A DNA stretch of 64,000 bases from Magallana gigas (lineage: Eukaryota). Location: NCBI RefSeq assembly GCF_963853765.1, contig NC_088861.1:14260001-14324000 (forward strand), in the 5' to 3' direction. Position numbers and translations under genes: made by a program. Shown in pieces: positions 5,346 through 35,439 of this stretch. The notes below the pieces were generated by a model. The model was not told the DNA's origin, ran no database searches, and saw only the letters and a program-made list of their open reading frames with translations. Position 1 is the first letter of the stretch. Each line of letters starts with the position of its first letter.

Positions 5346-8196
5346 GTATATCAAATATTTTACTAGTTAAATTCTAAAAATGTTATCAATACATTCCGTT
5401 TACACATACATTGTACAAATAGAAAACAGTGCAAAACATGAATAAAACTTTACTCAAATGTCAATGTAAATAAACAGTAATTAAACACATAGTTTTGTAG
5501 TTTTTTTATGTTAATGTTTTTAAATAGGGTTTTGTTTAGTTGTATGTAAACAAGTACATGTGTAGAGTTTTTTAAAATACGTAATATCTTTTGTCGAATT
5601 CTGAAGTTTATAAAAGGTAGTAATTAATTGGACCATATACACTTTCATAATAATCTTTTTTGAAAATTAGGAAAACCCTATAAATAACTTTTTACCCGAT
5701 TAATAATGTATTTGTTTGTCAATATCGATGTAACCGTCTTCAAATTTACTGTTAACCAGCTACTGAATGTAAACAAATGCATACAAATTATTAACTGAAG
5801 TTCGATATTTCTTGTTTCGCGCACAGCAAATTTTAATCGCAATTGATATTGATTCAAATCTGATAATCTAATAGTACATGTAATTTTCATATTTAGGTGG
5901 TTCGCCGACAATTTTATAACCAACTTCACATCATTCGCGAAAACGAATACAGTTTAATTATTTATTTTATTTTCATAAACTTATTCAATATCTTATACGG
6001 TGTTCCTTAAGCTCTCTGTTAGTAAGCTGTTATCAAAATGCTCATTAAATGTATTTTCGTTCACTCATCTTACAGGTAAATGCTTTTTGGTATATGTTAT
6101 AAAGATTTTAGAAAGTAATGTTCCAATAACGCAAAATTGGTAGAATTTGTGTGGGATAACTTAAGTAGCTTATGTAATAATGTCTGATTTTGATAGGACG
6201 TAAGATTATATAGAACATCATATCAGTGAGGTAGACAAAGAATACAATTACCTTCTTTTTTGCTTGCGAATATATGAAGTACTATTGGATGCAAGCTTAA
6301 AAAATGAAAATCAAACAATTACCCATTTAAAATACATATAATATGTAATTTGAAAACATGAAAATACAACAAATAATTAAAACAAGGGTTCCTTAAAGAA
6401 GGCAGGCACAACGTTTAATTTTTGCCCTTACAAGTAGCAAGACATGCAGTTGGAAAATCTTAAATCACAAGTTCCTGTCTCATTAGGAAATCAATATTCT
6501 GTCGCAACTTCACCAATATGAAGTGGGACAGATGAACTATACAAAGGCCAAGTTAAATATGAAGTCAGGAATTTGAAAGTAAAACATTTGCAATAATTAG
6601 ATCGATACTCTAAGCATATTTTACCTTAAGATATTCTTTAAAAGGATAAGGAAGAAAAATATTTGCGCTCCTTGGCTATATAGAGGATGAGCTATAAATT
6701 CAATTTTTGCCAATAAAACTGATATATGTATCAATTCTGGTCATAAAAGGAATCCAGTTTAATAATGTCGGTACAAATATTACTCGTATAAGAAGGTGCA
6801 AAAAACACTATGTAGAAATATTATAATTAAAAGTAATCGAAAATAACTTTTTAAAATAGTGGTATTAATGGTTATACCATCTATATTAATGATTTTTATC
6901 ATTTATGTTTTTTACAGAGACTGACAAAGTAAATAGGAATTCCCCATCAATTCTATAGAAAAAGAGCATAATTAAAGAGAAAAACTGCGATTTTACCAGG
7001 AATAAAGAGATGTTTTGTGAATCAGACTCCGGGCCGGAGTTAGTGATATTAAAACCGCCATTTTCATGTATAAAGGTTATAAACACATCATGTATAAGGT
7101 TATAAACACATCATGTGGAGATCAAATTACTGGCCCCTCAATAGTTAAGATGGGCATATCAGATCAGATGATTATAGCACATTGTCTACTTTTATTTTAA
7201 ATAATGATGTCAATAGAAACAATCCACAGTTTACTCATTTTTTCCGTTTAATTTGAATCAGTAAATTGGAGTAATAACTCTAATCAATTTAGACTAGAAT
7301 TTATACTTAAATAGAGTTCGTCGATGAGCAAAATAATAAATATTACGATTGATCTTTGATGAATGAACGACCCAGCAATGGATTCCGAAATCGTTGAATT
7401 CCAGTACGAACTGGAATACTATTACAGCATCACATAAGCGAAAGAGAGAGTGAGGGGGAGACAAAAAAGAAAGAGTGAGAGAGAGAAAGAACTCATTTTA
7501 ATTAAGTTAACATGTAGTCAAGATTTCAAAAGGTACCGCAAGTTCCTTTTCAAAATGGAAGTACACATTTGAAATAAGTTAACATGTAGTCAAGATTTCA
7601 AAAGGTACCACAAGCTCCATTTAAAAATGATGCTACTTGCCTTATAATGAAAAAAATGACTTTTAAATGAGTGCCTTATTAATGAGAAAAAAACAGATAA
7701 TTTTTGGATAAAATTTAATTAAAAATCAATCTAATAAAAATTATTCTTTTTTTACCTAGTAATAGTATCAATAGTGAAAGAGACCTTATTATTTTATGCA
7801 GATTTTCCTAGAAAAGAAACGTGGTGATAAAATGTTCAATGTTAGAATGTTCTAGATCGAACGTCAACAAGAAAACTACAAAACAGGAGCAGAGAAAATA
7901 CGTCTACAAAAATGTGATATGGAGGAGTTTTTTTTCTGCAATGATCGCTATCTTCATAACTTGCACCAAAGACATTTATTTTAATTTACATCTTTTTTCA
8001 CAATTTACAAATTTATCCAAAAAAAGAAAAAAAAATAACTAAATATTGTTAATGTAGATCAGTACGTTACCTTACAGCCAAATCGTTTTCTATGGGAATT
8101 TGAGTCTGACCTTGACATGATTAGTTCGGGCAGTCCGTGATTTTTCTTTGGTCGGTGAAGGTTTTGACCAATCGATAAACGGGGCGTGTGGTGTAG

Positions 8197-8334
8197 GACA
8201 GGATGAATCTCTGCCATTCAGTTAACTGAAATGTGACTGATCGGTTACTGAATGACATAGCTGTGCCATTCAGTCACCTTTCTAGACCTTTCAGTTAACA
8301 TTCATTTGACTGAATGGCAGAGGTTCATCCTGTG
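8197..8334. mobile_element. 138-bp MITE with CACAG-type termini and 3-bp TSD (CACTA/EnSpm-like)
   Basis: TIRs gacaggatgaa(t)ctctgccattcagt / actgaatggcagaggttcatcctgtg, flanked by TAG on both sides (8194-8196, 8335-8337). Confidence 0.8.
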
Positions 8335-8749
8335 TAGATTGCAGTCCTGTCATTTTCTAAGCTATGAATTATCAATCAATTTTTGTAAGAAAAAATGGGA
8401 ATCATACTTGGTGAATGTAAATGTAGAGTTTTGATTTTTAGTTCTGCTTTTATTTTTTCTGTTGGAATAACATTTTAACTATGCATATTTTAACTGAGTA
8501 TACTTGATATGTGCATGTATTATTTTAAACTTTACCAAAGTACATGTATGTATAAACACTTAAAATAGTGATATTTAGTCGCAAATATAGGGAAGAATGT
8601 TTGCATTAAGTGCGGAAAATCGGTTTCAGGAAGAAACCCTTTTGATTAAGGAAAAGTATCTTTATATATGTTTGCGATGCGGTAAAAAAAGTATTTTTAA
8701 TACAATAAGTGGTGTGAGAGAATGTGATGAAATATGTCCAGACTTTACC

Positions 8750-11700
8750 ATGCATTATCCTTTTTTACTTTGCCTTGTTTGTGCGTTGTCAAATGCACAG
8801 CTATCAGAACAGAACCCAGTCAAGTAAGTCATAATTTGGGTTTTTTGACGTTCGTCTGAACAGACCTTTTGTTTTTTCTTATCTTTTATTAATACATGTA
8901 ATATTTTTCTCGACAAAGTTTTGTAAGCGATTTTTTAAAACCGGAAAGAATATTGAAACTAATATGAATTTAGTCCTATAGCAATTATTAATGACACGTG
9001 TATTATATATTTTAAGTTCCTTTAAAAAAAATATTGACTACTTCCGGTTTTATGGGTCGGTGAAAATCGTTAATGGGAATATCAGTGTTAAACTAAAATC
9101 ACACGTCATTCGTTTTCTCAAAAAGTGTTCAAGTAAATGTTTCAATTGTTCATGTGTAATGACACATACAGTTCGCATATCGGAAAAAGTTATCGTTAGA
9201 TAATTCGGAAGAATAAGGGATCTGCAGGGGACATCGTTCAAAACAGTCCTTTAGCTGTAACTTTTTTATTTTCATCCGATTTTTAAAAAAAAAGTTTATT
9301 GTTGAGAATAAAGAGTACAACTTAAAAAATATTTTAAATTTTTTAGTTTGTTCGCCCCTTTTCTTAATTTTCAAGCCTTATATATCAAAGATATAGAAAA
9401 ATGTCTTCGCCTACATATTTGTACATCTAAACAAATTAAATCTAATTCTAAAATTTGAACGTTGTAACTAAAAAAATACACCAAATATTGCGTTTCATTC
9501 AATCATTGCAATATTCCTTGTAAAAACCGCAAGTACCGGAACCGGAAGTCCGATACCTTACATTTCATAGTGTAATATATTTGCTGTAAGACCGTTGCAA
9601 AATTGTATCAATATTTCTTCCAGTTTTCAAAAAAAAAAAAAAAAACGCTGACAGAAATCTGTCGAGAAAAATAATAATAGCTAGAACTTGTTTTGTCTCT
9701 AACAAAAAGTAAGGGCTTTTCGACATTCCCTTTACCTTTTTCATTTACAATGTCAAAAGAAAAATTCATCTCTAATCTATTTAACATTTCTGGTATTCTT
9801 GGTATAACCAGTTGCTTAGATAGGAGCTTATAAGTAGTGCAATGTGAAAAGAAAGATAACTCCAGAACTTTACAAGTAGCTACACTTTTAATTACAAAAA
9901 GAATATTTTTAAAAAATCATTTTAAAGTATGTATTTACAGTGGTAACAACGTTATTGTTGACAAACCAATCGTGTTAAATAGTTCGTGTAACGTGGGTGA
10001 TCGTTCGTGTAACGTGCGGGATCGTGCGTGTATCAGGAAAATTGGTTTGCGTTTTTTACCGTGCGTGTTCGTGCGTGATCGTGCAGTTTTTTCCTTTTGT
10101 AACCTTTTTTACGGAATGCCAGGATTTATTCTGAAAACGACAAATAGGTTTTGTAAAACAATGTGAATTTAAACCTTTTTAATAGAAGAACATTGATTCT
10201 CTCTTTATTTTTTTTTTTTATAGAAGAACATTCATTCTCTCTTTCCACGTTAAATACATTTAGTATTTCCATAGCTCATTCAATCGGTCGGGTTAGTTTT
10301 GCATAATTGATTATATTCAATTTTATATCAAGCATTTATTGTGTTTTGACACATAATTTTAATCATATTAGCAAGAGCGACACGTTGAATGAAAGCGGTC
10401 AAGCTTACCCATGCCCCGTTTTAAACCAAACGATTATTCCTAACGTTTTTCTTTCAAATGAGAATACGATACGCATTCCTATCTGGTACATTGTATATTT
10501 ATTTGTTTGAAATAAAAATTATTTAAACGCTTTAAAATTTAGAATATATAGAAGTAAATCAATTATGTACAGTAAATTATGAAAATATTGGATGTGAAAA
10601 ATCGAAATTCTATGGAACAAGGTAACAATTTTACCTGTACCCCACATAATTAAATCGTACGTAAGGGAATTGGATTACATAAACAGTCAACTCGTATGTA
10701 AATAATTTTGAGCAGTTTATGCATTATCTTCTTTTCTATTACACCTAATTTTGTTAACTTATAATTGACGTTAATATTCGTTATGGAGACACAAACATTA
10801 ATTTGTGTGTGAATCCTATATTGTGTATGAATGTGTTAAAAAATTTACTCGTTAAATATGAAACAGTGCATGACTAAAGTACATGCCGCTTTTCAATAAA
10901 CACAAACATAAAGCAATGCAAATTAAAGCAATACGTTTCCTTAATTATAATCTTAAAAATTAATTTTGATTTTGCGTGTTTAATGGTGTAGAATCGTTCG
11001 TTTGCGTGTTTTATCGTTTTTATTCGTGTATCGTGAAAATTCAGTCAGTTAGTGATCGTCCGTGTATCGTGCGTGATCGTTCGTGTATCGTGCGTGATCG
11101 TTCGTGTATCAGAATCGTGCGTGTCGTTTGTCAACAATAACGTTGCTACTACTGTATTTCTCGGTCACAAAACTTGGTATGCCTTCAGTATTTAAAGCAC
11201 AAATAGTCTATGCATATCAAGTTTTGGGTCAGAGAAATAAATACTTACTTTTATATGATTTTTTGAAAATATTCTTTAAGAAATTCAAAGTATAGCTACT
11301 TATAAAGTTCTGGGCTTATCTTTCATTTGCATCACTTACAAGTTTTTATTTAAGCATNNNNNNNNNNNNNNNNNNNNNNNNNNNNNNNNNNNNNNNNNNN
11401 NNNNNNNNNNNNNNNNNNNNNNNNNNNNNNNNNNNNNNNNNNNNNNNNNNNNNNNNNNNNNNNNNNNNNNNNNNNNNNNNNNNNNNNNNNNNNNNNNNNN
11501 NNNTAAAAAAATTGAAAAGGATGTTCAAAAGCCCTTGCTTTTTGTTGAAGAAATAAACAATTCTAATTTCAATTGTCATCGTTTAAAACTTTAATAACGA
11601 TTTTTGGTTTTTATTTGAATGATGATTAACCGTGTTTTTTTTTAAATCATTGTAGACCAAATACAAGTACACACCAGTGCAAAATATGGAATGAAATGTT

Positions 11701-13676
11701 ACACAAATGTGAGGGTAAATTGTTCTTAATTATTCAATTATTTTATTGAATTGGTTTTTCGTGATATTTTATAACAGTTTTTTCCCTTCGAAACAAACTA
11801 GAGAGCAACCCCATTTTAATTTTGTAATCTGTAACTTTAAAAATACCTTATATCTTTAGTCGAATGAAAGTAATGGTTCAAATGTTAGAATAACGGATGG
11901 CTTACCTATTTACATGAAATATACTGACCTTATTTAACATTGTATATCTAATTGTACAGAATGCAATGTTGGCTTCCTTGGTATCAACTGTTCCTTTCCT
12001 TGTCGATATCCTGGCTATGGCAGCAATTGTCAAAATCAATGTAACTGTCTTGAAATTGACTGTCATCCAGCTACTGGGTGTAAAGGTAAATATTAATATA
12101 ATTTGAAAATTGTTGCTTAGAATACATTATTGTAAACGATATTGATTCAACGGTAATTAAAATGATTGAATACGTGTCTTTTTTCATTTTAGATGGTTTG
12201 CCGACAACTTCATCACCAGCTGCAGTGTTGATATCCTCCAAGCAAGGAAATTCTCCTGAATTATTTACAACAAATAAAATAGGTTTTTTCTTACTCTATT
12301 TGTCAAATAGTCTTGTTGTATAAATGTATCTTTTTTCATTCCGTTTATTACAGTGGATTTATGTTTCAGAATGTCCTGTAGGGTATACAGGAAATCAATG
12401 TGATATCCCCTGTCGATATCCGTCTTTTGGTTACCTGTGTCAGTTTGCGTGTAATTGCAGCGAAGAACGATGCAATTTCACAAAGGGATGTGATGGTATG
12501 AAAGGTTAAAGTTCTTTTATTTTTCTAATACTACTCAAGAAATTTCAAAATCGACAACATTGTTTGATTGCAAACATTAATTTAAAAAAAAAGTGTAAGC
12601 GATAAGAAAGATGTCATAATTCCGAGGATAATCTACCTGTAATGGGTTTGCTATTAAGTTTACAACTACATGTTATATCATCATTAACAAACCTTAAACA
12701 TCCTGCGTAGTAAAAGATCGAAATATTACATGCTAGTTAATGAACGTCAATGTTAAACACGAGAGGAGAGGATTAATCGTACACCTACTCAAAGAACACA
12801 TAGACCTCCCGCCAGCACTCTCCAGATTGAACTGATGAATTCTTTTGCGGTATGTGTTTGAGACTAACCAATAAAGAACCGTCTACACACCGGAAAACCA
12901 AGTCTATGTTTTTGACGTCCAGCAGCAGGGTACATTACTCAACTAACCCTCCAAACACCATTAACAAGATTTAGGACCAAATTGACCAAAAATGGAATAG
13001 AGTCGCCAAAACTAAGATAAGGGATTGTAATCGAAGTACGAGATAGCACTGCAATCCCTGCATTACCACTCACAAAAACATATGCACTCCATCAATGATT
13101 TGACTATGTCTGATTACGTTAAATAACCCGTAACTTGTTTTAAACGTTAGTGGCTGTATAAATCCGCTCTTGATTTTATTACATTTTTATTCCTAGTCTA
13201 AACTATTTTGAAGAGTATTTTTAAATGTATATTTAACGGTAACCGTTTATAACTGAATAATGCTTAATTTGTAGCATACTTTGTTTTAAATAGAATAGTT
13301 GATTCTTATGTGCAAACGTTTAAAGCAAAAACAAACATTTCAATTATAAATACACATGACAGTGTCTGACATGGTATATGTAGTTTAAAAAGAAGAAAAC
13401 GGTTAATTTCTGTCATTCATTCAACTGAAATGTGACTAAATGGTAATTAAATGGCATATCTATGTCATTTATTTACCTTTCGATACATTACAGTAAATGT
13501 CAGTCAACTAAATTGCAGAACTTTATCCTGCGCAAACATTGTAGTTTCAGATTGCTTGGAAAGAAATAATGGGAGTGAATGTGAAATACTATGTCAGTAT
13601 CCTACGTTTGGTGTTGGCTGCCAAAGCCAATGTGACTGCAGTGAAGAATACTGCGATCCCTTAATGGGTTGTAATG
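8750..13676 (+). CDS. EGF-like repeat protein gene, 5' six exons (3' exons not identified)
   Basis: Exons 8750-8823 (signal peptide MHYPFLLCLVCALSNAQLSEQNPV, phase 2), 11656-11714 (PNTSTHQCKIWNEMLHKCE), 11960-12085 (EGF ECNVGFLGINCSFPCRYPGYG...), 12193-12282 (S/T linker), 12370-12495 (EGF) and 13551-13676 (EGF). All junctions are GT-AG and phase-compatible. Confidence 0.85.
9938..11154. mobile_element. Non-autonomous Tc1/mariner-like element (TA TSD) in intron 1
   Basis: ~29-bp TIRs cagtggtaacaacgttattgttgacaaac / gtttgtcaacaataacgttgctactactg with TA on both sides. Subterminal ~20-bp repeats (cgtgtatcgtgcgtgatcgtt-like) occur at 9983-10085 and 11020-11125. No transposase ORF. Confidence 0.8.
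11358..11503. other. Assembly gap (N run)
   Basis: 146 N. Confidence 1.
13396..13532. mobile_element. Degenerate copy of the 8197-8334 MITE
   Basis: Colinear similarity (tctgtcattcattcaactgaaatgtgactaaatgg ... ttatcctgcg vs tctgccattcagttaactgaaatgtgactgatcgg ... ttcatcctgtg). It ends ~18 bp before the 13551 exon. Confidence 0.6.
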
Positions 13677-14746
13677 GTAAAGTGTTGTTTTTGCTGTTGT
13701 CGTTTTTGTATTCTTAGCTATTTATTTATTGTTTAAATGTATAACAATTGTACATATCTAAATCAATTTACGAACATACTTAGTACTAATTAATGTAGCT
13801 AAACTTATGATTTTGTTTTCTATTAAGCATTTTATGCACATTTTACTGTCTTCAACATTCATTGTCATTAAAGATTATCAGCAAAATATGGACAAACAAC
13901 ATGGATATACGAAATAAATCGACATAATTGTTATTTTAATGAAAACAAAAAAATACATTCAAACAAAGGATATATTTATGCTTCTCGAATGTACGATAAT
14001 TTTATTATCCTATCATATATAATATAATAATACAAGGCCTTGTTTTGATTTTATGTTACAGTGACTCCGACGCATTGTGCCGCTGATAAACGTATTAAGC
14101 AAAACGAAGCCATGTTTTACATTACAATAGTTCTTGCAGTATGGGCGGCTGTCCAATGTGTGATATATTTTTGTCTCTCGTGTGGATTGGTATCGTGTAA
14201 TTTTGATAAAAAAAATATCATGTAATTGAATAAAATGATTTATATGAAATATTACACGGATACAAAAGTTAAATTGTTGGTATATCAATACATAATTTGG
14301 TTTTGTACTATATTTTCGGATAGAGTAGAGCAACATTTTACATCGAACATTCATAAGATTTAAAGACATTTTAATTGTTTAAAATATGTCCTCAACTGCT
14401 ATATAACACGCTTTTCCTGAGTGATAACAACTTCTTAATGTCAAACTGATACAATTAATTGTATGATCCATGTGATACATTTGTATGTATTATTCAGAAA
14501 TGTTTCACCTATTATTAATAAATGCAAAGAATATATCTGTGTTTGAGTCAGTGTTTAAATTAAGTCTAAGAACGGTAACATTGTTTTTCGCTGACTTATG
14601 TTTGAACTGTTATGACACAAGATATTATCATCGCCATAAACATTCATTTGCAGAAAGATGACCCAATGAAGTAATGTATCCTAAATGAGTGTTTTCTTGG
14701 AAGTACTTATAGCGTGAGCAGTAAACACGTGTTATGACTAATTTCT

Positions 14747-26518: not shown

Positions 26519-29190
26519 TAAACTTTGTCCGTTTCTGAATCTTTAATTACACAATTTTTACAAATCGTATATTGGATTTGAATCTATAAAAAACATTAAA
26601 TATTTTAAAAATTCACAACAGCGATTGTACGAATAACTGCATTTCCCAACTATATTCATTGCAATTTTTTTTGAGTGACACATACTAACCTATGCAGTAT
26701 GGAATTTAATTATTTAATTCTTTTCAAAAGCATAAATAAAATCATGAAATAATCACACTTTTGACAAAATGTATAGTGGAGGTGTTGGCGCATTCGATAG
26801 CGTAGAATGATTTAAATACGGTGACCCCAGATGTGTCCATATCGATATATATCGCGGTAACATGATTGAAACCTTAAACAAGCTACTTTACTCTACTTGT
26901 GCATTCTCTCCATCCGTACACAAGGTGGTGTATTCGTTTGGTCGGATAGAGAGCTCCAAGAGTAATCCTAATTTGCATGTTTGCGGTTCGGATATATCCG
27001 GTAGATCTCTATCGCCTACTTTGCAGCTAGCATGTAGATTATGGAAATATCCTGGATCAGTTCTGAAGGTAGGATACAAATACACACCTTAGGAGGTAAT
27101 ATGGGTTCCTTACACAAAAGAAGAGATGAATATGTGAATGTAAAGCATTAGCGCCGTAATTTGACAGTTCTGTTTGTTTGCTACCAAGGGGATTGAAGAT
27201 GCTAAGGATTGTACAGTTTATGTCAGGAGGTGTTGAGTCACGTTATTTCCGCCGTCACGTTATGTCCGCCGTCACATATGTCCGCCACTTTTTTTTTTTT
27301 TAAATCGTCACGTTATGTCCGCCATCACGAAATGTCCGCCACTCGTTTGAAAAAATCGTCACGTTATATCCGCCATCACGAAATGTCCGCCACTTTTTTT
27401 TTAACATCGTCACATTATGTCCGCCACCTTATAAATTTCATTATTTTTACTTTTAATCGCCATTTAAAGCTCGATGTTACTAAATATTTGTCTATCTTAA
27501 ACAAAATGACTCATTATGTCTATTCCAAAATTGAAATGATTATTATATACGAAATACAATCATTACGACTTAATAGTGGACATGTAGAGTTAGATATCTA
27601 TTTGAAGAAAATAATCTGACCTAGAGATTGATATCATCATAAAAATAAAAAACAATTCATAAGAATATCATGAGTTGTCGTTATTTCAAACTGTACGCGT
27701 AACACAAATTTAAGCATATATTAAGATTTTTTTCTGTACGCGTAGTTTTATGATTATGCATTGGTTTGTAATGGTAAGTTAACTCAATAGAATGACCATT
27801 GTATGAATGGACTCATTTATTCCAAAAATTTAAATGATGAAAAACAAATATTTTTGCTGCTATTTTTGGAATTACAGACCCTGAAACGTACTACTACACG
27901 TAAACTTTGTCCGTTTCTGAATCTTTAATTTTACAATTTTACAAATCGTATATTGGATTTGAATCTATAAAAAACATTAAATATTTTAAAAATTCACAAC
28001 AGCGATTGTACGAATAACTGCATTTCCCAACTATATTCATTGCAATTTTTTTTTAGTGACACATATTAACCTATGCATATGGAATTTAATTCTTTAATTC
28101 TTTTCAAAAGCATAAATAAAATCATTAAATAATCACACTTTTGACAAAATGTATAGTGGAGGTGTTGGCGCTTTCGATAGCGTTGAATGATTTAAATACG
28201 GTGGCCCCGGATGTGTCCATATCGATATATATCGCGGTAACATGATTGTAACCTTAAACAACCTACTTTACTCTACTTGTGCATTCTCTCCATCCATGCA
28301 AGATGTGTATTCATTTGGTCAGATAGAGAGCTCCAAGAGTAATCCTAATTTGAATGTTTGCGGTTTGGATATATCTGGTAGATCTCTATCTCCTACTTTG
28401 CAGCTAGCATGTAGATTATGGAAATATCCTGGATCAGTTCTGAAGGTAGGATACAAATACACACCTTAGGAGGTAATATGGGTACCTTACACAAAAGAAG
28501 AGATAAGTATGTGAATGTAAAGCATTAGCGCCGTAATTTGACAGTTATGTTTGTATGCTACCAAGGGGATTGAAGATGCTAAGGATTGTACAGTTTATGT
28601 CAGGAGGTGTTGAGTCACGTTATGTCCGCCGTCACGTTTTGTCCGCCGTCTCGATATGTCCGCCACTTTTTTTGAAAAAAATCGTCACGTTATGTCCGTC
28701 ACTTTTTTTTAACATCGTCACATTATGTCCGCCACCTTATAAATTTCATTATTTTTACTTTTAATCGCCATTTAAAGCTCGATGTTACTAAATATTTGTC
28801 TATCTTAAACAAAATGACTCATTATGTCCATTCCAAAATTGAAATGATTATTATGTACGAAATACAATCATTACGACTGAATAGGGGACATGTAGAGTTA
28901 GATATATACTTTAAGAAAATAATCTGACCTAGAGATTGATATCATCATAAAAATATAAAAAAATTCCTCAGAATATCACGAGTTGTTGTTATTTCATACC
29001 GTACGCGTAACACAAATTTAAGCATATATTAAGAATTTTTTTCTGTACGCGTAGTTTTATGATTATGCATTGGTTTGTAATGGTAGGTTAACTCAATAGA
29101 ATGACCATTGTATGAATGCACTCATCAATTCCAAAAATTTCAATGATGTAAAACAAATATTTTGCTGCTATTTTTGTAATTAGTAGTTTT
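26519..29190. repeat. Local ~1.3-1.4 kb tandem duplication downstream of B1, each copy containing a 17-bp motif array
   Basis: 26519-~27870 repeats at 27901-~29190. gtcacgttatgtccgcc arrays lie at 27239-27425 and 28614-28735. Confidence 0.9.
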
Positions 29191-29429
29191 TAATCGACCT
29201 TGCACATCCTTTTACATAGCTGTCATATGCACACGAGTGTTATTTTAAAAACACTCATATAGGTTTTGGATTAATGAGATTTTAAAGCGGAATTCAAGTA
29301 CAAGTATTTGGATTCAAGTATTTATATTGACAAGTGGAACTAGAAACGTTTTATATAATATACTTACAGTATAGGCCTTATTAGGCGCCTTTTAATTTTA
29401 AAAAAATCTATCCCATACTGCCCCGCGCT

Positions 29430-29441
29430 TGCGCATGCGCA
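29430..29441. promoter_or_regulatory. NRF1-consensus palindrome TGCGCATGCGCA in the left subterminal region
   Basis: Matches YGCGCAYGCGCR, 132 bp upstream of the transposase ATG. Mirrored at 35341-35352. Confidence 0.45.
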
Positions 29442-29572
29442 GTTTAACGTAGGGCAAGGTTGAATGAATCTAAACAATAACAGTTACCTGTAGAACCGCC
29501 ATATTGCGAGGTGACGCAAATGACACTTTGTTTTGAATGTGTGAATGGTTTTTATGTTGATTTCTCTACGCA

Positions 29573-31520
29573 ATGCCGGCCCATTGCTGTGCATATGGTT
29601 GTAAAAGCAGACAAACAGCAGGTGAAAACATCAAGTTTTTCCGCATACCTAAGGATGAACACCTGAGGGCTAAGTGGATATCGGCCATTAAACGTGATGA
29701 TTGGGAGCCTAGCGATCATACCAGGATTTGCTCTAAACATTTTATTAATGGTGAGTAAGTGTTTCACGTAAACATGATACTATTATGTGAATAATGATGT
29801 GTAGCTTTTATACAGATGTAGTATAGTGAGCAGTAATAAATAGTTCATGCTTTCAACAGGTAATCGGTATCACTGGTCAGTATGCTATAAAATCAAAATG
29901 GCGGCTAGTTAATTAAGTTATTTATTTATTTAAGACGTCCTGCAGAAGTTTTATTTATATATGCATAAATTTATAATACCTTTAATAAATATGTAAATAC
30001 TACTGGCGTCCGACCAGTTCTCGCCGAGTACCATTTCTCGCCAGTGCATGGTTTCATTTTTCGGACGTAGCATATATAGTGTTTGAATGTGTCCACAACA
30101 TCAAGGCATGCAAGATGCACTTAATATTATTTTAGATTGGTTTTTAATACATTATTTTTTTTATAGGACAGCCTTGCAGAGATCCAACAAATCCTGATTA
30201 TGTGCCATCTGTATTCTGCCATCGGCCCATCAAAGAAGGTGTACTCCAGGAAAAAGTTCAGCGCCATAAACGCCTTGTTGAAAGAAAGGAAAACATCGCC
30301 AGGAGCGAGTCAGCAAAGGCCCTTCTTACTCTCAGTATGGACAAACCAGAAAAGTGTGCCGGGACTGCGACACAGACACCTGTCGTTCATCATTGTGATT
30401 CGGAAGTGCAAAGTGATATCACGCTCCCTGTGATGACTAGTCTCATCGTCACCAACCAGGTCTTGAAAAACATCTGTGATTCCAATGCAGTGACCATCAA
30501 AGAACAGCAGCTTGGTCAACAAAGAGCCCATGAAGTTTGTCGCAAGCAAGAAGATGAGTTGAAATCATTGGAATCCAGACTTCAAAAGAAGGAGGAAGAA
30601 AACACACAGCTATTGGAAGAGCTCAAGAAAAAGACACTTAGTTTTAAGACTATTGAGGGGATGATAAGAAAACTAAATTCTACACAGGATTTCCAAATTT
30701 CAAAACTTTCCATGCAGTGTTCCTAGAAACATCTTCAAAAGTGAAAAGAAAGAAAACAAAGCTGTCGAAAGAGGATGAATTATTGCTGACTCTCGTGAAA
30801 TTAAGACGAAATCTTGCTATGACAGACCTTGCCTATCGATTCAACATTAGTCAATCCTCAGTTACCAGTATATTCCATGCGTGGCTGGATGCTCTATATG
30901 CTACTTTAGGAGGACTTGTGCATTGGCCAGAGACTGATGTGTGTCAATTACCGGAAGTGTTCCAGAATGAAGTTTTCCGAAAAGTGAAACGCGTCATTAC
31001 CTGTACCGAGATTTTCATTGAGAGGCCATCCAATCTGAAGGCGAGAGCACAAACCTACTCAAACTACAAGCGCCATAACACCATCAAGATTCTTGTCGGA
31101 GCGAGTCCTTCAGGATGTATAACTTTCCTGTCTTCATGTTGGGGAGATCGTGTCAGTGATAGACAGATTACTACTGAATCAGGAATTCTTGACAAACTCC
31201 TTCCAGGAGATGTGGTACTTGCTGACCGGGGGTTCAACATGACAGAAGACTTTGCCCTAAAAGGAGCTCAGCTGATTGTTCCAGCCTACACAAAGGGGAA
31301 AAGTCAGTTACCAAAAGAAGATGTTGAGAAATCTCGAATGATGTCTCGTGCTCGGATTCACATCGAACGAGTTATTGGGAGACTGAAGGACTTTGAGATT
31401 ATCAAGGGCCCATTACCCATAAACTTTGTGAAGAGAAAATCAGACGGTCAAGTGACTTGTGGGGACAAGATAGTGCGAGTTGTTGCAGCAATTGTGAATA
31501 CTAACGATGCCATTTTGTGA
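29573..31520 (+). CDS. THAP + coiled-coil + HTH + DDE_Tnp_4-type transposase (~510 aa if one frameshift is repaired)
   Basis: Exon 1 29573-29750 encodes a THAP domain (CCAYGC...W...ICSKHF). Exon 2 30167-31520 continues YVPSVF. A 1-nt deficit lies in GGGG at 30657-30660; restoring it gives EGDDKKTKFYTGFPNF. Downstream motifs are LLLTLVKLRRN, DLAYRFNISQSSV, TYSNYKRHNTIK, LADRGF and RIHIERVIGRLK. Confidence 0.88.
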
Positions 31521-31823
31521 GATCTGAGTGAAACTGGTTCTGATCAATGAACATGCTATTGCTTGTGTCACTGTGAACAAGTACAATTGTTTCAATTAAT
31601 TAAATATAGACTAATCATTAAATTTTTGATGGTTTCCCTGTTATCAAGTAATGTCTAGTTGATTGATGTTTTTCCATTGTTTTCATGTTGCTTGTCATTA
31701 AATATTGAATCCACTGATTGAAAATAATCAGTAAATCATTGATTGATTCCCTGAATTATGATTTTGTTTTTATGTATATGAACATCAATATCATAATTTT
31801 CAATATTGTTTGCTTTGAATATC

Positions 31824-31866
31824 AATAAATAAAACCATCACAACAATATGTCAGAAATATTTTATT
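31824..31866. terminator. Back-to-back polyadenylation signals for the two convergent transposon genes
   Basis: AATAAA on + at 31824-31829 and TTTATT (AATAAA on -) at ~31861-31866, between the two stop codons. Confidence 0.45.
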
Positions 31867-32183
31867 AAACATGAAAAAGATGAAATGATAAGGCATTAAA
31901 AATGAGTGAAAACAGACTACAACAGATATAATGGACATCCGAACACATGTAATAAAAAATACTAGTGCTCCGTATTGAGGGGCCAGCTTTCAAAAACATT
32001 AAACACAAACTGAAATCTAGGTAGTTCATAATCAAAGATCACAATAGATTTACAGTCATTGTCCATTTCTTCACAGCATATATAAATCTTTATGAAAAAA
32101 TGCAATCCACACAAGGCATACTTATGCACAGTTCTTGATCATATTTGCAGTCATACACATCATCAGAGTTAATAATTGTTTAG

Positions 32184-35100
32184 TCACTGTTTGCTTTTCT
32201 TGGCGGGGGGCATTCTTCTGCAAGGTAGGCAAGTCCACGAACCCTTGGGGGCGGCTTTAAGTCCCACACATTTGAAATGATACCAGCCAACTTTACAATG
32301 TCCAGATTCACATTCTATCATGTTGTCGAAGCTCTCAGGTTTTCCACATATACACTCGGTGTCCTGAACATTGTTGTTGGCATCAAGAAGTCTTTGAGTA
32401 AGAATTTCTGGAAGCATTGCTTTCAGGAAGAAGCTGTTCAAAAATGGCAGCACTTTCTCATTGAAGAAATGTGGATCACGATGAATGCGTTCAACATGTA
32501 GTCCACGAGTGGTCCAACACACAAAATCACAGTAATCCACATCACACACTGCCATTTGTCCCTGTACTTGGTAAAAGTGTCTTGAAGCACTTGGTAGCAT
32601 GTTGGTACAAGGCTGTCCTCTCTCAGTTTGGGCATGAGGTCTCAGATAAAAATTCGGGGTGTTCACTTCACATGGATTAGTGTCCCTGATTTTAAATGGA
32701 CACTTGATCTCCATCAGTCCTTTACCGCAACACATACAGTCAGTCACTGCATCTGGGCTGGCTCCAAGAGTAGGGTAATGTGGGTTGAGCATCAGACCAC
32801 TCCGTCTCGCTGAAAATGATGGATGGTGTATCTTCATCATCTCGGAGTACTCTTTCAGGGCTACTTCCTCTTTCGTCTTCCCCACTTGATTGCTGGTGTC
32901 TCGATGTTTGGAACATAGTGCATTATTCCTTTGATGAGGGAAACACTTGGTCTCTGCACATTTGTGTGGCAAATGTCATAGAACCTTGAAGCTGTAAGTC
33001 TGCCTTCTCGGAACTTGAACCACTGAGTACACAAACTTTGCTCTCTGGTCAGCTTCTCAACGTTGTGTGATTCCTCATGGCTGACAGCGATTGTTCCGAG
33101 AATCTCCTCACACTTTGTTCGAAGTTCGGTCTCTGAAAGCCTGGCATTTAACGGATCAAAGAAGGAGGAAAACACTGTCGGTAGTGCGGGTTTAGCTAGA
33201 GTTGGATTAGGCCGAGGATTTGTAACAGTGAAGATGACTGCGGATGGGTTGCAATTCCTCAGTTTCTGCAGAAAAGATTCGGTGTTGTCAAACACTGGGT
33301 CTGCTTGTTGTGGAGCTGCATTGGAAGGTTGGTGAAAGTTGTCCTGTTTTGGTTTTTCAAAGTTGATTAGCGATAACTGGACTGCCTCTACCTGGAATCA
33401 AAATACAATAAAATAAAATTTCATAAAAATCAATTACATGTGTATTGTGTATCATCAAGCTAAACCATTAATTTAAAATTAATTTTTTTTTTCTTTTTGT
33501 AAAATTTAATTTTGAAACAAAATGCTAGTATCTCTTCTAGCTGTTGCGTCTTCTTTTTTTTATTTGTTCAGAGTGAAGCTTTGCCTTAACTAATATTCTC
33601 TCTGACATTATTAGCCTTTTTTTTAACTGCATCAGAATGTACTAGTATACTATTTTAACATATGCATGTATACACATTTGAAGAACTTCACAATCAAGAT
33701 TTTAGAAAAACTGATATAAATTAACAAAATAATCATAATTCTACAGAAAGTTAATACAAATATAAATGAATTCCAGTTTAAATTTACCTTCTTTGTAAAG
33801 TTCTGGTTCCATAAGCAAGGCATTGAAGTACAAGCTACCTTGTTGTAACCCAGTCGAACGCTTGCCTCGATCTTGAAGAGGATGGCAGCAACATGGGAAC
33901 ATACCTCACCCAATCTGAAATTAAAAGATGAATTATTAATGTAACATTTACTTGGCAATAGGATGGCATAAAAAGTACATCAGTAGTCTACGAACACCAG
34001 CAACAACTTTTGCATAAACTTTTGTACATACAGCAAAACTCGTTTATAACGAATTTCAAGGGACCATAGAAAAAACTTCGTTATAGCCGTAATTCGCTAT
34101 ACGTTAATAACGAATTGGTAAAAAATATTATAGCGAATTCGTTATAAAATGATTAAGGGTTTTACCGGCTAACAGTTTTCTAAACTATTGTAAGTTATAA
34201 AATTAGTATTAATGTCATTTACAAAAAATATCAATATAACCATTTCATTTCAATTTTAAAAAAAAATTCCGTATACTCTTTGAATTTGAGTATTTTATAT
34301 ATGCATATTAAAATTGTATGTTTCTTCAATGAATTTTGAAATAGAAAAAATTCGTTATGATAAAAAACGTTAAAATTTTGCCAGCAGGGGTTTTAAAATT
34401 ACTTCGTTATAGCCGTAAATTCGTTATAGCCGTGTTCGTTATATACATCAATTTTCTATAGGTTTATTTTAGAAATTTGCCGGGACATGAATAATAATTC
34501 GTTATAGCCGTAAATTCGCTATATCCGTGTTCGTTATATTCGAGTTTTGCTGTATATCTTAATTTACAGTAGTCGTTACAAACTTAGTTATGAAAAAGTT
34601 CTTCCAAAATGTATTGCCCATCACAAGAAAATCTGCATAAGAATATTTTACAGAATCTCAGTACTCAACATGTATGGTAACAAACATAAAATAGTTTTTT
34701 TTCCTTCTCATTCAACAGCTGTTTACTGACCTGTTGATAATCCGATTTAACCTTGTATATCACATTGTATCAACTACTTATTTGTATGCCCTGTTACATA
34801 TTAAGATTTAGGCATACGCATTAAAAGATATAGATGCTTACCCAGCCATGCATGTGCAGTGTGCGTTTAGAATGGTGCAGTCTGTGTCCACGTACACCCA
34901 TGCTTCGTGAGGTTTCTCGTACAGGGCTTGCGATCTGTTGACCTTGGCCTTCAAAAAGCACTTGTCACTTCCCAAAGTTGAACTCAACACGGTCTGAACC
35001 CACCCACTGTGAAAAAAGTTGTAGGCCTCCAAAGAACGGTAAGCTTTCGATGTCTCTCGGGTAAATTGTCCTGGAGTGTCTACATGGTAACAGTAAATTT

Positions 35101-35257
35101 CCCCAAACTGAACGTCCGGCCATTTTGTTACATTGTCCTCCCAAGTTTCACCGTCTATGAACGGATCAAAACACAGATCCTTGATCCCAAACCTCAATAA
35201 TTTCTCCTTGTACTCCCGCTGAGGGGCCTCCGGCAACGACTTGTAATACAAGCTCAT
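32184..35257 (-). CDS. SWIM zinc finger + YqaJ/lambda-exonuclease + PHD finger protein (~583 aa if one frameshift is repaired)
   Basis: Exons (minus) 35257-34842, 33914-33788 and 33391-32184, all GT-AG and phase-compatible. SWIM CTCMAG|LGEVCSH spans intron 1. YqaJ motifs are TREQ..W...R..RLTAS, LGASPD, EIKCP and YQVQGQM. C-terminal C4HC3 PHD is CICGKP...MIECESGHCKVGWYHFKCVGL...WTCLPC. A 1-nt deficit lies in the C4 run at 32880-32883. Confidence 0.9.
34031..34552. mobile_element. 522-bp Tc1/mariner-type MITE nested in intron 1 of the YqaJ-PHD gene
   Basis: TIR cagcaaaactcg...ataacgaa / ttcgttatattcgagttttgctg with TA TSD and repeated ttcgttatagccg motifs. Confidence 0.85.
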
Positions 35258-35340
35258 TGTAACGGCTAAATCCGATTAATTTCACGCTGCGATTCACTTG
35301 ACTTCATCCGATAATGGCTGTGGGTCTGCCCTACGCGCAT

Positions 35341-35352
35341 CGCGCATGCGCG
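35341..35352. promoter_or_regulatory. NRF1-consensus palindrome CGCGCATGCGCG in the right subterminal region
   Basis: Matches YGCGCAYGCGCR, ~85 bp upstream of the YqaJ gene ATG (minus strand). Confidence 0.45.
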
Positions 35353-35439
35353 GGGTCAAGGGTCAAATTTTAAAAACAAAAGGCGGCTAATAAGGCCTAT
35401 ACGCAATTGATATCAAAACCTTTGATATAAAAAAAAATA

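What the first reader, a model, noticed from the sequence alone, without database searches (positions are those of the whole stretch)
29373..35398. ISL2EU transposon whose accessory protein joins a SWIM finger, a lambda-type exonuclease and an ING-like PHD finger
The THAP-DDE plus YqaJ pairing is established for ISL2EU, but the role of the nuclease is unknown. Here it has intact PD-(D/E)xK residues (ASPD, EIK), an N-terminal SWIM finger and a C-terminal C4HC3 PHD resembling ING PHDs. The PHD keeps the Met and Trp of the ING aromatic cage but has Glu where ING has Tyr. A histone-tail reader on a 5'-3' exonuclease suggests chromatin-guided target choice, end resection or recombination-assisted repair, or protection from silencing. 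It sits in a locus dense with microhomology deletions and duplications, though no causal link is shown.
Basis: partly seen in the sequence, partly recalled or inferred. Interest (0 to 1): 0.72.

Follow-up and report, generated by a model that had tools for sequence, protein, structure and literature searches.

The report
Oyster ISL2EU transposon, standard two-gene layout
This is a 6-kb ISL2EU "jumping gene" in the Pacific oyster whose helper protein really does join a SWIM zinc finger, a lambda-type exonuclease and an ING-like PHD finger. That three-part build is the ordinary design of this helper protein across animals, not a peculiarity of this copy, and the papers I could search name only the nuclease.

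Summary
Window 29374-35397 is one ISL2EU (PHIS superfamily) DNA transposon of the Pacific oyster. It has 30-35 nt terminal inverted repeats starting GG and a TA target duplication.

- **Transposase (+ strand):** THAP + HTH_Tnp_4 + DDE_Tnp_4, 2 exons.
- **Helper gene (- strand, tail-to-tail):** 3 exons, about 583 aa, SWIM finger, YqaJ/lambda-type exonuclease, C-terminal ING-type PHD.

RNA joints confirm all three introns. Each gene carries a single 1-nt frameshift in this copy. Other oyster copies have an extra G at the transposase site.

The domain calls hold.
- **PHD:** the best solved matches are all ING/Yng.
- **Nuclease:** it matches LHK-Exo and lambda exonuclease and keeps the SPD and ExK residues.
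- **N-terminus:** it keeps CxCx7CxH, and a model built on a tick relative matches the ZSWIM8 SWIM region (Z 8.9).
- **Cage residue:** Glu replaces the ING cage Tyr.

The implied novelty does not hold. The same architecture is found in ticks, a firefly, a brachiopod, snails, a scallop and a catfish. In three relatives checked it sits tail-to-tail with the same type of transposase. 113 of 133 relatives keep the PHD, and the rest show remnants.

The searched literature names only "YqaJ" for this gene. Histone-guided targeting or end resection remains an untested inference, and it is weaker for this oyster lineage, which lacks the cage aromatic.

The parts
29372..29373 (.). Left target-site duplication, TA
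   Evidence: Read directly from the sequence. It matches TA at 35398-35399.
29374..29403 (+). Left terminal inverted repeat, starting GGCC
   Evidence: Inverted repeat I1, 35 nt and 91% complementary. The 20-mer occurs only at the two ends, with 0 expected by chance.
29421..29456 (+). Left subterminal block CCCCGCGC-TGCGC...GTAGGGCA, a candidate transposase (THAP/HTH) binding site
   Evidence: The same motifs sit in inverted orientation near the right end. Binding is inferred, not tested.
29573..29750 (+). Transposase exon 1 (THAP zinc finger)
   Evidence: Pfam THAP 7e-17. The GT donor and the spliced joint 29749/30166 (cut +1) appear in an RNA contig.
30167..31520 (+). Transposase exon 2: coiled-coil linker, HTH_Tnp_4 and DDE_Tnp_4. 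A 1-nt frameshift lies near 30656.
   Evidence: Pfam HTH_Tnp_4 4e-20 and DDE_Tnp_4 6e-43. Two overlapping reading frames are visible. Contigs of three other runs carry one more G behind 30656 (table 4).
34842..35257 (-). Helper gene exon 1: N-terminal helices and beta-strands of the SWIM domain, ending in CxC
   Evidence: ORF and splice model. Joint 33914/34842 appears in an RNA read and in a contig. It is homologous to the N-termini of full-length relatives.
34029..34552 (.). Nested high-copy MITE inside helper-gene intron 1; not part of the ancestral element
   Evidence: 26-nt inverted repeat I4. An empty-site joint 34028/34553 appears in three runs, and depth is in the thousands.
33788..33914 (-). 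Helper gene exon 2: CxH half and helix of the SWIM finger
   Evidence: The spliced product reads HCTCMAGLGEVCSHVAAILF. CxC..CxH is invariant or nearly so in relatives.
32184..33391 (-). Helper gene exon 3: linker, YqaJ/lambda-type exonuclease (1-nt frameshift about 32880) and C-terminal ING-type PHD (about 32214-32354)
   Evidence: Pfam YqaJ 1.6e-10 plus the N-terminal piece at 3.4e-4. The profile matches LHK-Exo at 2e-16 and lambda exonuclease at 1e-9. Relatives are contiguous across the frameshift point.
35327..35354 (-). Right subterminal block CCCCGCGC-TGCGC...GTAGGGCA
   Evidence: Read directly from the sequence.
35368..35397 (-). Right terminal inverted repeat
35398..35399 (.). Right target-site duplication, TA
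   Evidence: Read directly from the sequence.

Best explanation
This is one copy of an autonomous-type ISL2EU (PIF/Harbinger-ISL2EU-Spy superfamily) cut-and-paste DNA transposon of the Pacific oyster. It is about 6.0 kb long and carries one frameshift in each of its two convergent genes.

Gene 1 is the THAP-HTH-DDE transposase. Gene 2 is the family's accessory protein. Its full and conserved architecture is an N-terminal ZSWIM-like SWIM zinc-finger domain, a lambda-exonuclease (YqaJ) PD-(D/E)xK nuclease, and a C-terminal ING-type PHD finger. This architecture is ancestral and standard for the family across animals. It is not a new fusion in this element.

Inferred mechanism, not shown:
- The transposase binds the subterminal repeats and cuts out the element.
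- The accessory protein is held on chromatin by its PHD finger reading the histone H3 tail, and on DNA or the transposase by its SWIM domain.
- Its 5'-3' exonuclease resects the broken ends. This would favour homology-directed repair that restores the donor copy, or process the ends for integration.

In the oyster lineage the cage tyrosine is replaced by Glu, Val or Ile. Trimethyl-lysine reading is therefore probably weakened or changed there.
For: **Element anatomy.** Terminal repeats, TA duplication and a GG start. These fit the published ISL2EU definition: THAP+HTH+DDE transposase, YqaJ second ORF, 2-bp duplication and GG termini (PMC4482050; PMC4122938).

**Domains.**
- Pfam gives THAP, HTH_Tnp_4, DDE_Tnp_4 and YqaJ.
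- The PHD's best solved matches are all ING/Yng, at 5e-14 for the single sequence and 1e-20 for the profile.
- The nuclease profile matches LHK-Exo (3syy) at 2e-16 and lambda exonuclease (1avq) at 1e-9. SPD, ExK and QxQ are invariant.
- The SWIM motif CxCx7CxH is conserved. Pfam SWIM scores 14.8-18.9 bits against a cutoff of 19.6 in 4 of 10 relatives.
- An AlphaFold model of the tick relative P0077's N-terminus has pLDDT 77. Its only strong match is ZSWIM8: Z 8.9, rmsd 2.6 over 99 residues, with the next hit at Z 4.1. ZSWIM8 is also the Foldseek top hit.

**Family norm.**
- 9115 representative clusters match at E<=1e-3, and 149 at E<=1e-30.
- 113 of 133 relatives with a complete tail keep C4HC3; the other 20 show remnants.
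- All 6 full-length relatives keep the SWIM motif, and 32 relatives share the N-terminal region.
- The taxa are Ixodes, Photinus, Lingula, Littorina, Haliotis, Pecten and Neoarius.
- Relatives in Littorina, Lingula and a tick-type contig lie tail-to-tail with a transposase: THAP/HTH/DDE in the first two, HTH/DDE in the cut tick contig. These transposases are 41-46% identical to the window's.
- Two 99.8% identical 6.27-kb Littorina copies are bounded by inverted repeats.

**Expression.** Spliced joints for all three introns appear in oyster RNA data.
Against: - No biochemical or genetic data exist for any ISL2EU accessory protein, so the mechanism is inference from domain homology.
- This copy cannot make either full protein as assembled. 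Each gene has one frameshift, and a DNA-type contig reproduces the helper-gene region 32729-32953 exactly (record 14).
- The PHD of this oyster lineage lacks the cage aromatic and has Gly where ING has the Glu next to the cage Trp.
- Pfam SWIM never reaches its gathering score.
- Lambda-type exonucleases usually work with an annealing protein, and none is encoded here.
- The related single-gene Spy transposons are reported to transpose with the transposase alone (abstract of PMC11304231). An accessory nuclease is therefore not a general need of the superfamily.
- The survey used a query that contained the PHD, so PHD-bearing relatives are favoured. ESM Atlas clusters show SWIM-YqaJ proteins with SAP or Peptidase_C48 domains instead.
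Confidence: 0.85

Rival explanations
1. One reading: the SWIM and PHD fingers are an unusual, element-specific addition to the ISL2EU nuclease, that is, a new fusion in this oyster element.
For: The three papers that describe ISL2EU's second ORF name only the YqaJ domain. Pfam's precomputed labels miss the SWIM and often the PHD.
Against: The same three-domain order is found in seven animal genera. It lies inside ISL2EU-type elements in Littorina, Lingula and a tick-type contig. 113 of 133 relatives carry the PHD, and 6 of 6 full-length ones carry the SWIM motif.
Confidence: 0.03
2. The nuclease is part of the transposition chemistry itself, not a repair helper. Like TnsA of Tn7, a PD-(D/E)xK enzyme that cuts the 5' strands beside the DDE protein TnsB, it would cut or trim the second strand at the element's ends. 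SWIM and PHD would then serve only to assemble the complex.
For: The gene is kept inside the element, next to the transposase, over very long evolutionary distances, as expected for an essential partner. The catalytic residues are invariant. The TnsA/TnsB precedent is from established knowledge and was not tested here.
Against: The closest solved relatives are processive 5'-3' exonucleases that need a free end, not endonucleases. Spy elements of the same superfamily are reported active with the transposase alone (abstract of PMC11304231). A conserved histone-reader type PHD is not explained by this role.
Confidence: 0.15
3. The PHD does not read histones. It would act as a structural or protein-binding zinc module, or as a nuclear or chromatin retention signal of another kind. 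The protein's main role would be protection of the element, for example against silencing, or degradation of competing linear DNA.
For: In the oyster lineage the cage Tyr is Glu, Val or Ile and one Arg2-contacting acid is lost, yet the finger's zinc ligands are kept. This suggests a function that does not need the full cage. Other SWIM-YqaJ lineages swap in SAP or Ulp1-type domains.
Against: Across the family, 83 of 118 fingers keep an aromatic residue (Y, W or F) at the cage position. 90 of 118 keep the cage Trp, and most keep the Met. The profile similarity to ING/Yng H3K4me3 readers is far above that to any other PHD class: 1e-20 against 4e-10.
Confidence: 0.2
4. The helper gene is a host gene, or a domesticated one, that merely lies inside or next to the transposon here.
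For: Databases annotate relatives as ordinary 'uncharacterized protein LOC...' genes.
Against: It lies between the inverted repeats. It is multi-copy within species. It is repeatedly paired with the transposase in the same orientation. In the oyster it decays by frameshifts.
Confidence: 0.02

Closest known systems
ISL2EU transposons as defined by Han et al. (PMC4122938, PMC4482050): THAP-HTH-DDE transposase plus a YqaJ second ORF
   Same: Both genes, the 2-bp target duplication, termini starting GG, a size near the reported mean of about 4.8 kb for autonomous elements, and occurrence in animals.
   Different: The duplication is TA here, while the paper infers A|AT|T. [quoted passage not shown] The SWIM and ING-type PHD domains shown here for the whole family are not mentioned.
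Lambda exonuclease and LHK-Exo (PDB 1avq, 3syy); YqaJ family PF09588
   Same: Profile match at 1e-9 to 2e-16 over about 190 residues. The SPD...ExK catalytic motif and the QxQ helix are kept.
   Different: It is embedded in a 583-aa eukaryotic, intron-containing protein between two zinc-finger domains. No partner annealing protein is encoded. Activity and oligomeric state are unknown.
PHD fingers of ING1-5, Yng1/2 and Pho23 (H3K4me3 readers)
   Same: C4HC3 spacing, the M-I-x-C-D/E core, W-F/Y-H and P-K-G-x-W-x-C. These are the top 20 solved matches.
   Different: In this copy and its close oyster relatives, the cage Tyr before the first Cys is Glu (Val or Ile in the next relatives), and the Glu before the cage Trp is Gly. 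Most other family members keep Tyr, Trp or Phe at the cage position. The finger is attached to a nuclease, not to a histone acetyltransferase or deacetylase adaptor.
SWIM domain of ZSWIM8 (PDB 9rwz) and Pfam SWIM PF04434
   Same: Beta-strands followed by a helix, with CxC...CxH. Fold match Z 8.9, rmsd 2.6 over 99 residues.
   Different: Sequence similarity is marginal: Pfam is below its cutoff and the PDB profile E value is 2.1. The domain has extra N-terminal helices shared only within the transposon family.
RAG2 PHD finger in the RAG1/RAG2 recombinase (transposon-derived)
   Same: Functional analogy only: an accessory subunit of a DDE cut-and-paste enzyme carries a PHD finger that couples DNA cleavage to H3K4me3 chromatin (established knowledge).
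   Different: No homology beyond the PHD fold. RAG2 has no nuclease domain. Histone binding is not shown for the ISL2EU protein.
PIF/Harbinger Myb/SANT-like second ORF, and Tn7 TnsA
   Same: Two-gene transposons in which a second protein is needed beside the DDE transposase. TnsA is also a PD-(D/E)xK nuclease.
   Different: The Harbinger partner is a DNA-binding and nuclear-import factor without a nuclease. TnsA is a restriction-enzyme-like endonuclease, not a lambda-type exonuclease.

Membership tests
ISL2EU (PHIS superfamily) DNA transposon | DDE transposase of the IS5/Harbinger type with HTH and an N-terminal THAP domain | tested here: met
   Pfam THAP 7e-17, HTH_Tnp_4 4e-20 and DDE_Tnp_4 6e-43. 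The exon 1-2 splice is confirmed.
ISL2EU (PHIS superfamily) DNA transposon | Second ORF with a YqaJ exonuclease domain | tested here: met
   PF09588 scores 41.9 bits against a cutoff of 22. The gene lies convergent with the transposase and inside the inverted repeats.
ISL2EU (PHIS superfamily) DNA transposon | 2-bp target-site duplication and terminal inverted repeats that usually start GG | tested here: met
   TA|GGCC...GGCC|TA. The dinucleotide is TA, not the AT of PMC4482050. No empty site was found to prove the duplication.
ISL2EU (PHIS superfamily) DNA transposon | Transposase groups with reference ISL2EU sequences in a phylogeny | not tested
The only support is 41-46% identity to transposases that neighbour ORF2 homologues in three other animals.
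YqaJ / lambda exonuclease family | PD-(D/E)xK catalytic residues (D...ExK) in family-typical motifs | tested here: met
   GASPD and EIKCP are invariant in alignment A1. The profile matches 3syy at 2e-16 and 1avq at 1e-9.
YqaJ / lambda exonuclease family | 5'-3' exonuclease activity | not testable with these tools
   Needs an enzyme assay. This copy is also frameshifted inside the domain, at about 32880.
ING-type PHD finger (H3K4me3 reader) | C4HC3 zinc ligands with ING-like spacing, and best similarity to ING/Yng | tested here: met
   The 20 best PDB matches are all ING family, at 5e-14, and 1e-20 with the profile. Pfam PHD is below its cutoff in this copy (20.9 against 24) but above it in relatives.
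ING-type PHD finger (H3K4me3 reader) | Cage for trimethyl-lysine: Tyr before Cys1, plus Trp, Met and Ser | tested here: not met
   Glu replaces Tyr, while Ser, Met and Trp are kept. Across the family, Y, W or F occupies this position in 83 of 118 fingers; the oyster lineage has E, V or I.
ING-type PHD finger (H3K4me3 reader) | Binds the H3K4me3 peptide | not testable with these tools
   Needs a peptide array or ITC.
SWIM zinc finger | CxCxnCxH signature before and within a helix | tested here: met
   CTCx7CSH in the spliced product. H136, C137 and C139 are invariant, and C147 and H149 are nearly invariant, in A2.
SWIM zinc finger | Pfam PF04434 at gathering score | tested here: inconclusive
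   Relatives score 14.8-18.9 bits against a cutoff of 19.6, at the right place, in 4 of 10.
SWIM zinc finger | SWIM fold | tested here: met
   The model of relative P0077 1-190 (pLDDT 77) matches ZSWIM8 residues 110-213 at Z 8.9 and rmsd 2.6 over 99 residues, with the next hit at Z 4.1. The same chain tops Foldseek at E 0.05, probability 0.96.

The most novel reading that the evidence does not exclude
The conserved ING-type PHD would make the ISL2EU accessory nuclease a chromatin-gated partner of the transposase, analogous to RAG2 in V(D)J recombination. It would bring a transposon-encoded 5'-3' resection activity to H3K4-methylated chromatin. The element would then choose open, promoter-proximal targets or steer repair of its own excision gap towards homologous recombination. 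The Tyr-to-Glu change of the oyster lineage would retune the finger to a lower methylation state or to the unmodified tail. This would be the first DNA-transposon family shown to carry its own histone reader joined to an end-processing enzyme.
Probability: 0.2. Interest if true: 0.7.

Novelty: new member of a known kind. Interest (0 to 1): 0.36.

Why it matters
The element itself is an ordinary, decaying member of a known transposon group. What is useful is the family-level annotation. The second protein of ISL2EU has been described in the papers I could search only as a "YqaJ" protein of unknown role. It is in fact a conserved SWIM, lambda-exonuclease and ING-type PHD protein across arthropods, molluscs, brachiopods and fish.

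This gives concrete, cheap experiments for a long-open question, namely what the second ORF does:
- histone-peptide binding by the PHD;
- an exonuclease assay;
- transposition with and without ORF2.

Apparently intact, near-identical copies, such as those in Littorina saxatilis, could serve as starting material. It also offers a possible parallel to the RAG2 PHD finger. For genome annotation, it explains thousands of "uncharacterized protein" models in invertebrate genomes as transposon genes.

Tried and rejected
- **Pfam on single exons:** exons 1 and 2 gave nothing for SWIM, because the finger is split by intron 1. I did not type the spliced protein into any tool. I tested full-length relatives instead.
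- **Context look-ups:** The look-up of encoding contigs had nothing on record for the two closest relatives, P0001 and P0007. Three more distant full-length relatives gave context.
- **Profile of the N-terminus against PDB sequences:** only an insignificant ZSWIM8 match, E 2.1. The fold search was needed.
- **Literature:** searches combining 'SWIM' and 'PHD' were swamped by swimming papers and PhD titles. 'YqaJ' plus 'PHD finger' gave one irrelevant paper. Bao et al. 2009 is not held, so I cannot exclude that it or Repbase notes these domains.
- **Helper-gene frameshift in other copies:** the read tables list the extra G at the transposase frameshift, but 22 indel rows were not shown. Whether other oyster copies are intact at the helper-gene frameshift is therefore not settled. 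One contig of an unlabelled, DNA-like run reproduces the window exactly there.
- **Rejected readings:** a host-gene or domestication reading, and a Harbinger assignment. The duplication is 2 bp rather than 3 bp, and the partner is YqaJ rather than Myb.
- **Not tested:** any causal link to the neighbouring deletions and duplications.
Full report
**What is there**

The window is AT-rich animal DNA. Earlier notes on this window and the best protein hits identify it as Pacific oyster, Magallana gigas.

- **Ends.** A 35-nt inverted repeat (91% complementary) lies at 29369-29403 and 35368-35402. A 20-mer from the end occurs only at these two places, with none expected by chance.
- **Boundaries.** Read base by base, the element is GGCC...GGCC (29374-35397), flanked by TA on each side.

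**The two genes**

*Transposase, + strand.*
- The ORFs carry THAP (7e-17), then HTH_Tnp_4 (4e-20) and DDE_Tnp_4 (6e-43).
- Exon 1 (29573-29750) ends at a GT donor and exon 2 starts at 30167. An RNA contig shows exactly this GT..AG joint.
- The frame changes once, in a run of G near 30656. Contigs of three other oyster runs carry one more G there (table 4). The shift is therefore private to this copy or to the assembly.
- Read through, the product would be about 510 aa. This is close to the 509-aa transposase beside a Littorina homologue.

*Helper gene, - strand.*
- It has three exons: 35257-34842, 33914-33788 and 33391-32184.
- Joints in oyster RNA data confirm both introns. Each appears in one raw poly-A RNA read plus contigs.
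- A 1-nt frameshift lies at about 32880, between ...AIKWG and KTKEE.... Relatives P0001 and P0033 are contiguous there.
- Read through with X at the break, the protein has 584 positions.
- Intron 1 holds a nested high-copy MITE (34029-34552). It has its own 26-nt inverted repeats and an empty-site joint in three runs.

**Domains of the helper protein**

*Nuclease.*
- Pfam YqaJ scores 41.9 bits against a cutoff of 22. The N-terminal fragment and Viral_alk_exo also match.
- A family profile matches LHK-Exo (3syy) at 2e-16, lambda exonuclease (1avq) at 1e-9 and mimivirus R354 at 4e-8.
- SPD, ExK and QxQ are invariant in the alignment.

*PHD finger.*
- It falls below Pfam's cutoff in this copy. 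Even so, the 20 best solved matches are all ING1-5, Yng1/2, Png2 or Pho23, down to 5e-14, while the next class (PHF10) is at 1e-5.
- With a profile, ING/Yng reach 1e-20 against 4e-10 for NSD3.
- The printed alignment shows Glu at the ING cage Tyr, with Ser, Met and Trp kept. It also shows Gly where ING has the Glu before the Trp.

*SWIM finger.*
- The motif is created by splicing exon 1 to exon 2, giving HCTCMAGLGEVCSHVAAILF.
- Pfam SWIM stays just under its cutoff in relatives: 14.8-18.9 bits against 19.6, in 4 of 10. The Cys and His positions are invariant or nearly so.
- An AlphaFold model of the N-terminus of the tick relative P0077 (pLDDT 77; four strands then a helix) has one outstanding match among 48,161 chains. 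That match is ZSWIM8 residues 110-213, at Z 8.9 and rmsd 2.6 over 99 residues, with the next hit at Z 4.1.
- Foldseek ranks the same chain first.

**Is the architecture special?**

No.

- **Size of the family.** An exhaustive search with the nuclease+PHD piece found 9115 representative clusters at E<=1e-3 and 149 at E<=1e-30.
- **PHD.** Of 133 collected relatives with a complete nuclease and a tail of at least 55 aa, 113 carry an intact C-terminal C4HC3. The other 20 show decayed or truncated versions of the same finger.
- **SWIM.** All six relatives with a full N-terminus carry CxCx(5-9)CxH. 32 share the N-terminal region, and many begin exactly at the exon-2 equivalent because the gene models miss exon 1.
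- **Taxa.** Named members come from Ixodes ticks, the firefly Photinus, the brachiopod Lingula, the snails Littorina and Haliotis, the scallop Pecten and a catfish. All are annotated 'uncharacterized'.
- **Genomic context.** In Littorina (two loci), Lingula and a tick-type contig, the gene lies tail-to-tail, 0.3-1.6 kb from a transposase gene. That gene carries THAP, HTH_Tnp_4 and DDE_Tnp_4 in Littorina and Lingula, and HTH_Tnp_4 plus DDE_Tnp_4 in the contig-truncated tick gene. These transposases are 41-46% identical to the window's.
- **Young copies elsewhere.** The two Littorina copies are 99.8% identical over 6.27 kb and bounded by inverted repeats. They are apparently intact.
- **Variation.** The ESM Atlas shows the same N-terminal fold in front of YqaJ in many mollusc, cnidarian and arthropod clusters, some with SAP or Peptidase_C48 domains. 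The SWIM-nuclease core is thus older than, or more widespread than, the PHD version.

**Literature**

- Three papers define ISL2EU as a THAP-HTH-DDE transposase plus a YqaJ second ORF, with a 2-bp duplication and GG termini. They state that the second ORF's function is unknown.
- None mentions SWIM or PHD. No paper in the library holds both 'ISL2EU' and 'PHD finger'.
- Bao et al. 2009 and Repbase could not be read.
The norm seems not to have been spelled out in accessible papers.

**How it most likely works**

*Shown.*
- The element's anatomy.
- The conserved pairing of the two genes.
- Conservation of the catalytic residues and zinc ligands.
- Transcription and correct splicing of family members in the oyster.

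*Inferred.*
- The transposase recognises the ends. Both ends share a subterminal CCCCGCGC-TGCGC...GTAGGGCA block, and the GGGCA core recalls THAP-type sites (my own knowledge).
- The helper protein is tethered by its PHD to the H3 tail, and by its SWIM domain to DNA or a partner.
- Its lambda-type exonuclease resects 5' strands at the breaks made by excision. This would favour homology-directed refilling of the donor site or prepare ends for integration.

I put about 0.3 on this specific mechanism and 0.85 on the identity and family-norm statement.

*Rivals.*
- A TnsA-like direct role in strand cleavage.
- A PHD that does not read histones.

*Cautions.*
- In the oyster lineage the cage aromatic is E, V or I, whereas 83 of 118 family fingers have Y, W or F. 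An H3K4me3 reading is therefore least secure for this very copy.
- From my own knowledge, an acidic residue placed in a PHD cage can shift preference towards lower methylation states. This is a lead, not a result.

**Verdict**

This is a correct and careful observation of an ordinary element. It is a new member of a known kind, both of its genes are frameshifted, and no link to the neighbouring rearrangements was tested. Its residual value is the family-wide domain annotation and the experiments it suggests.

That agrees with a multi-copy, decaying family.

Noticed in passing
window 34029-34552: A 524-bp MITE with 26-nt inverted repeats (ATACAGCAAAACTCG...) and internal TTCGTTATAGCCGTAA repeats is nested in intron 1 of the helper gene. 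Three runs show the empty-site joint 34028/34553, and word depth there is in the thousands, so it is a very high-copy oyster repeat.
   Followed up: partly
window about 30000-30053: A short stretch inside the transposase intron has extreme depth (about 30,900 in one run). It also shows an 'opposite strands' joint at 30044/30049 and many loose ends on both sides. It is probably the end or a hairpin of another very abundant repeat inserted here.
   Followed up: no
window 29421-29456 and 35327-35354 (- strand): Both ends of the element carry, 47-75 bp inside the termini and in inverted orientation, a GC-rich block CCCCGCGC(T/A)TGCGC... followed by GTAGGGCA. This is a candidate binding site for the THAP/HTH transposase.
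   Followed up: partly
window 28614-28745: Five copies of a 17-nt unit GTCACGTTATGTCCGCC, spaced 17-36 nt apart, lie about 650 bp upstream of the element. Their origin is unknown; they may be subterminal repeats of another transposon.
   Followed up: no
L002 and L003 (Littorina saxatilis, GCA_037325665.1), 7847-14124: Two 6.27-kb ISL2EU copies on different chromosomes are 99.8% identical. They have open 619-aa SWIM-YqaJ-PHD and 509-aa THAP-HTH-DDE genes and TTGAGGTCTGTCGATTG termini. This looks like a recently active family.
   Followed up: partly
P0066 / P0198 (Neoarius graeffei gene models): The catfish relative carries a PRDM-type PR domain piece in front of the SWIM-YqaJ-PHD body (Pfam PRDM2_PR 9.5e-6, 25.8 bits, just under the 27-bit cutoff). 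This is either a chimeric gene model or an exon capture or fusion.
   Followed up: no
ESM Atlas clusters: Other SWIM-YqaJ protein clusters of molluscs and cnidarians carry SAP or Peptidase_C48 (Ulp1-like) domains in place of or beside the PHD. This suggests swapping of the chromatin or DNA tether among related transposon nucleases.
   Followed up: no
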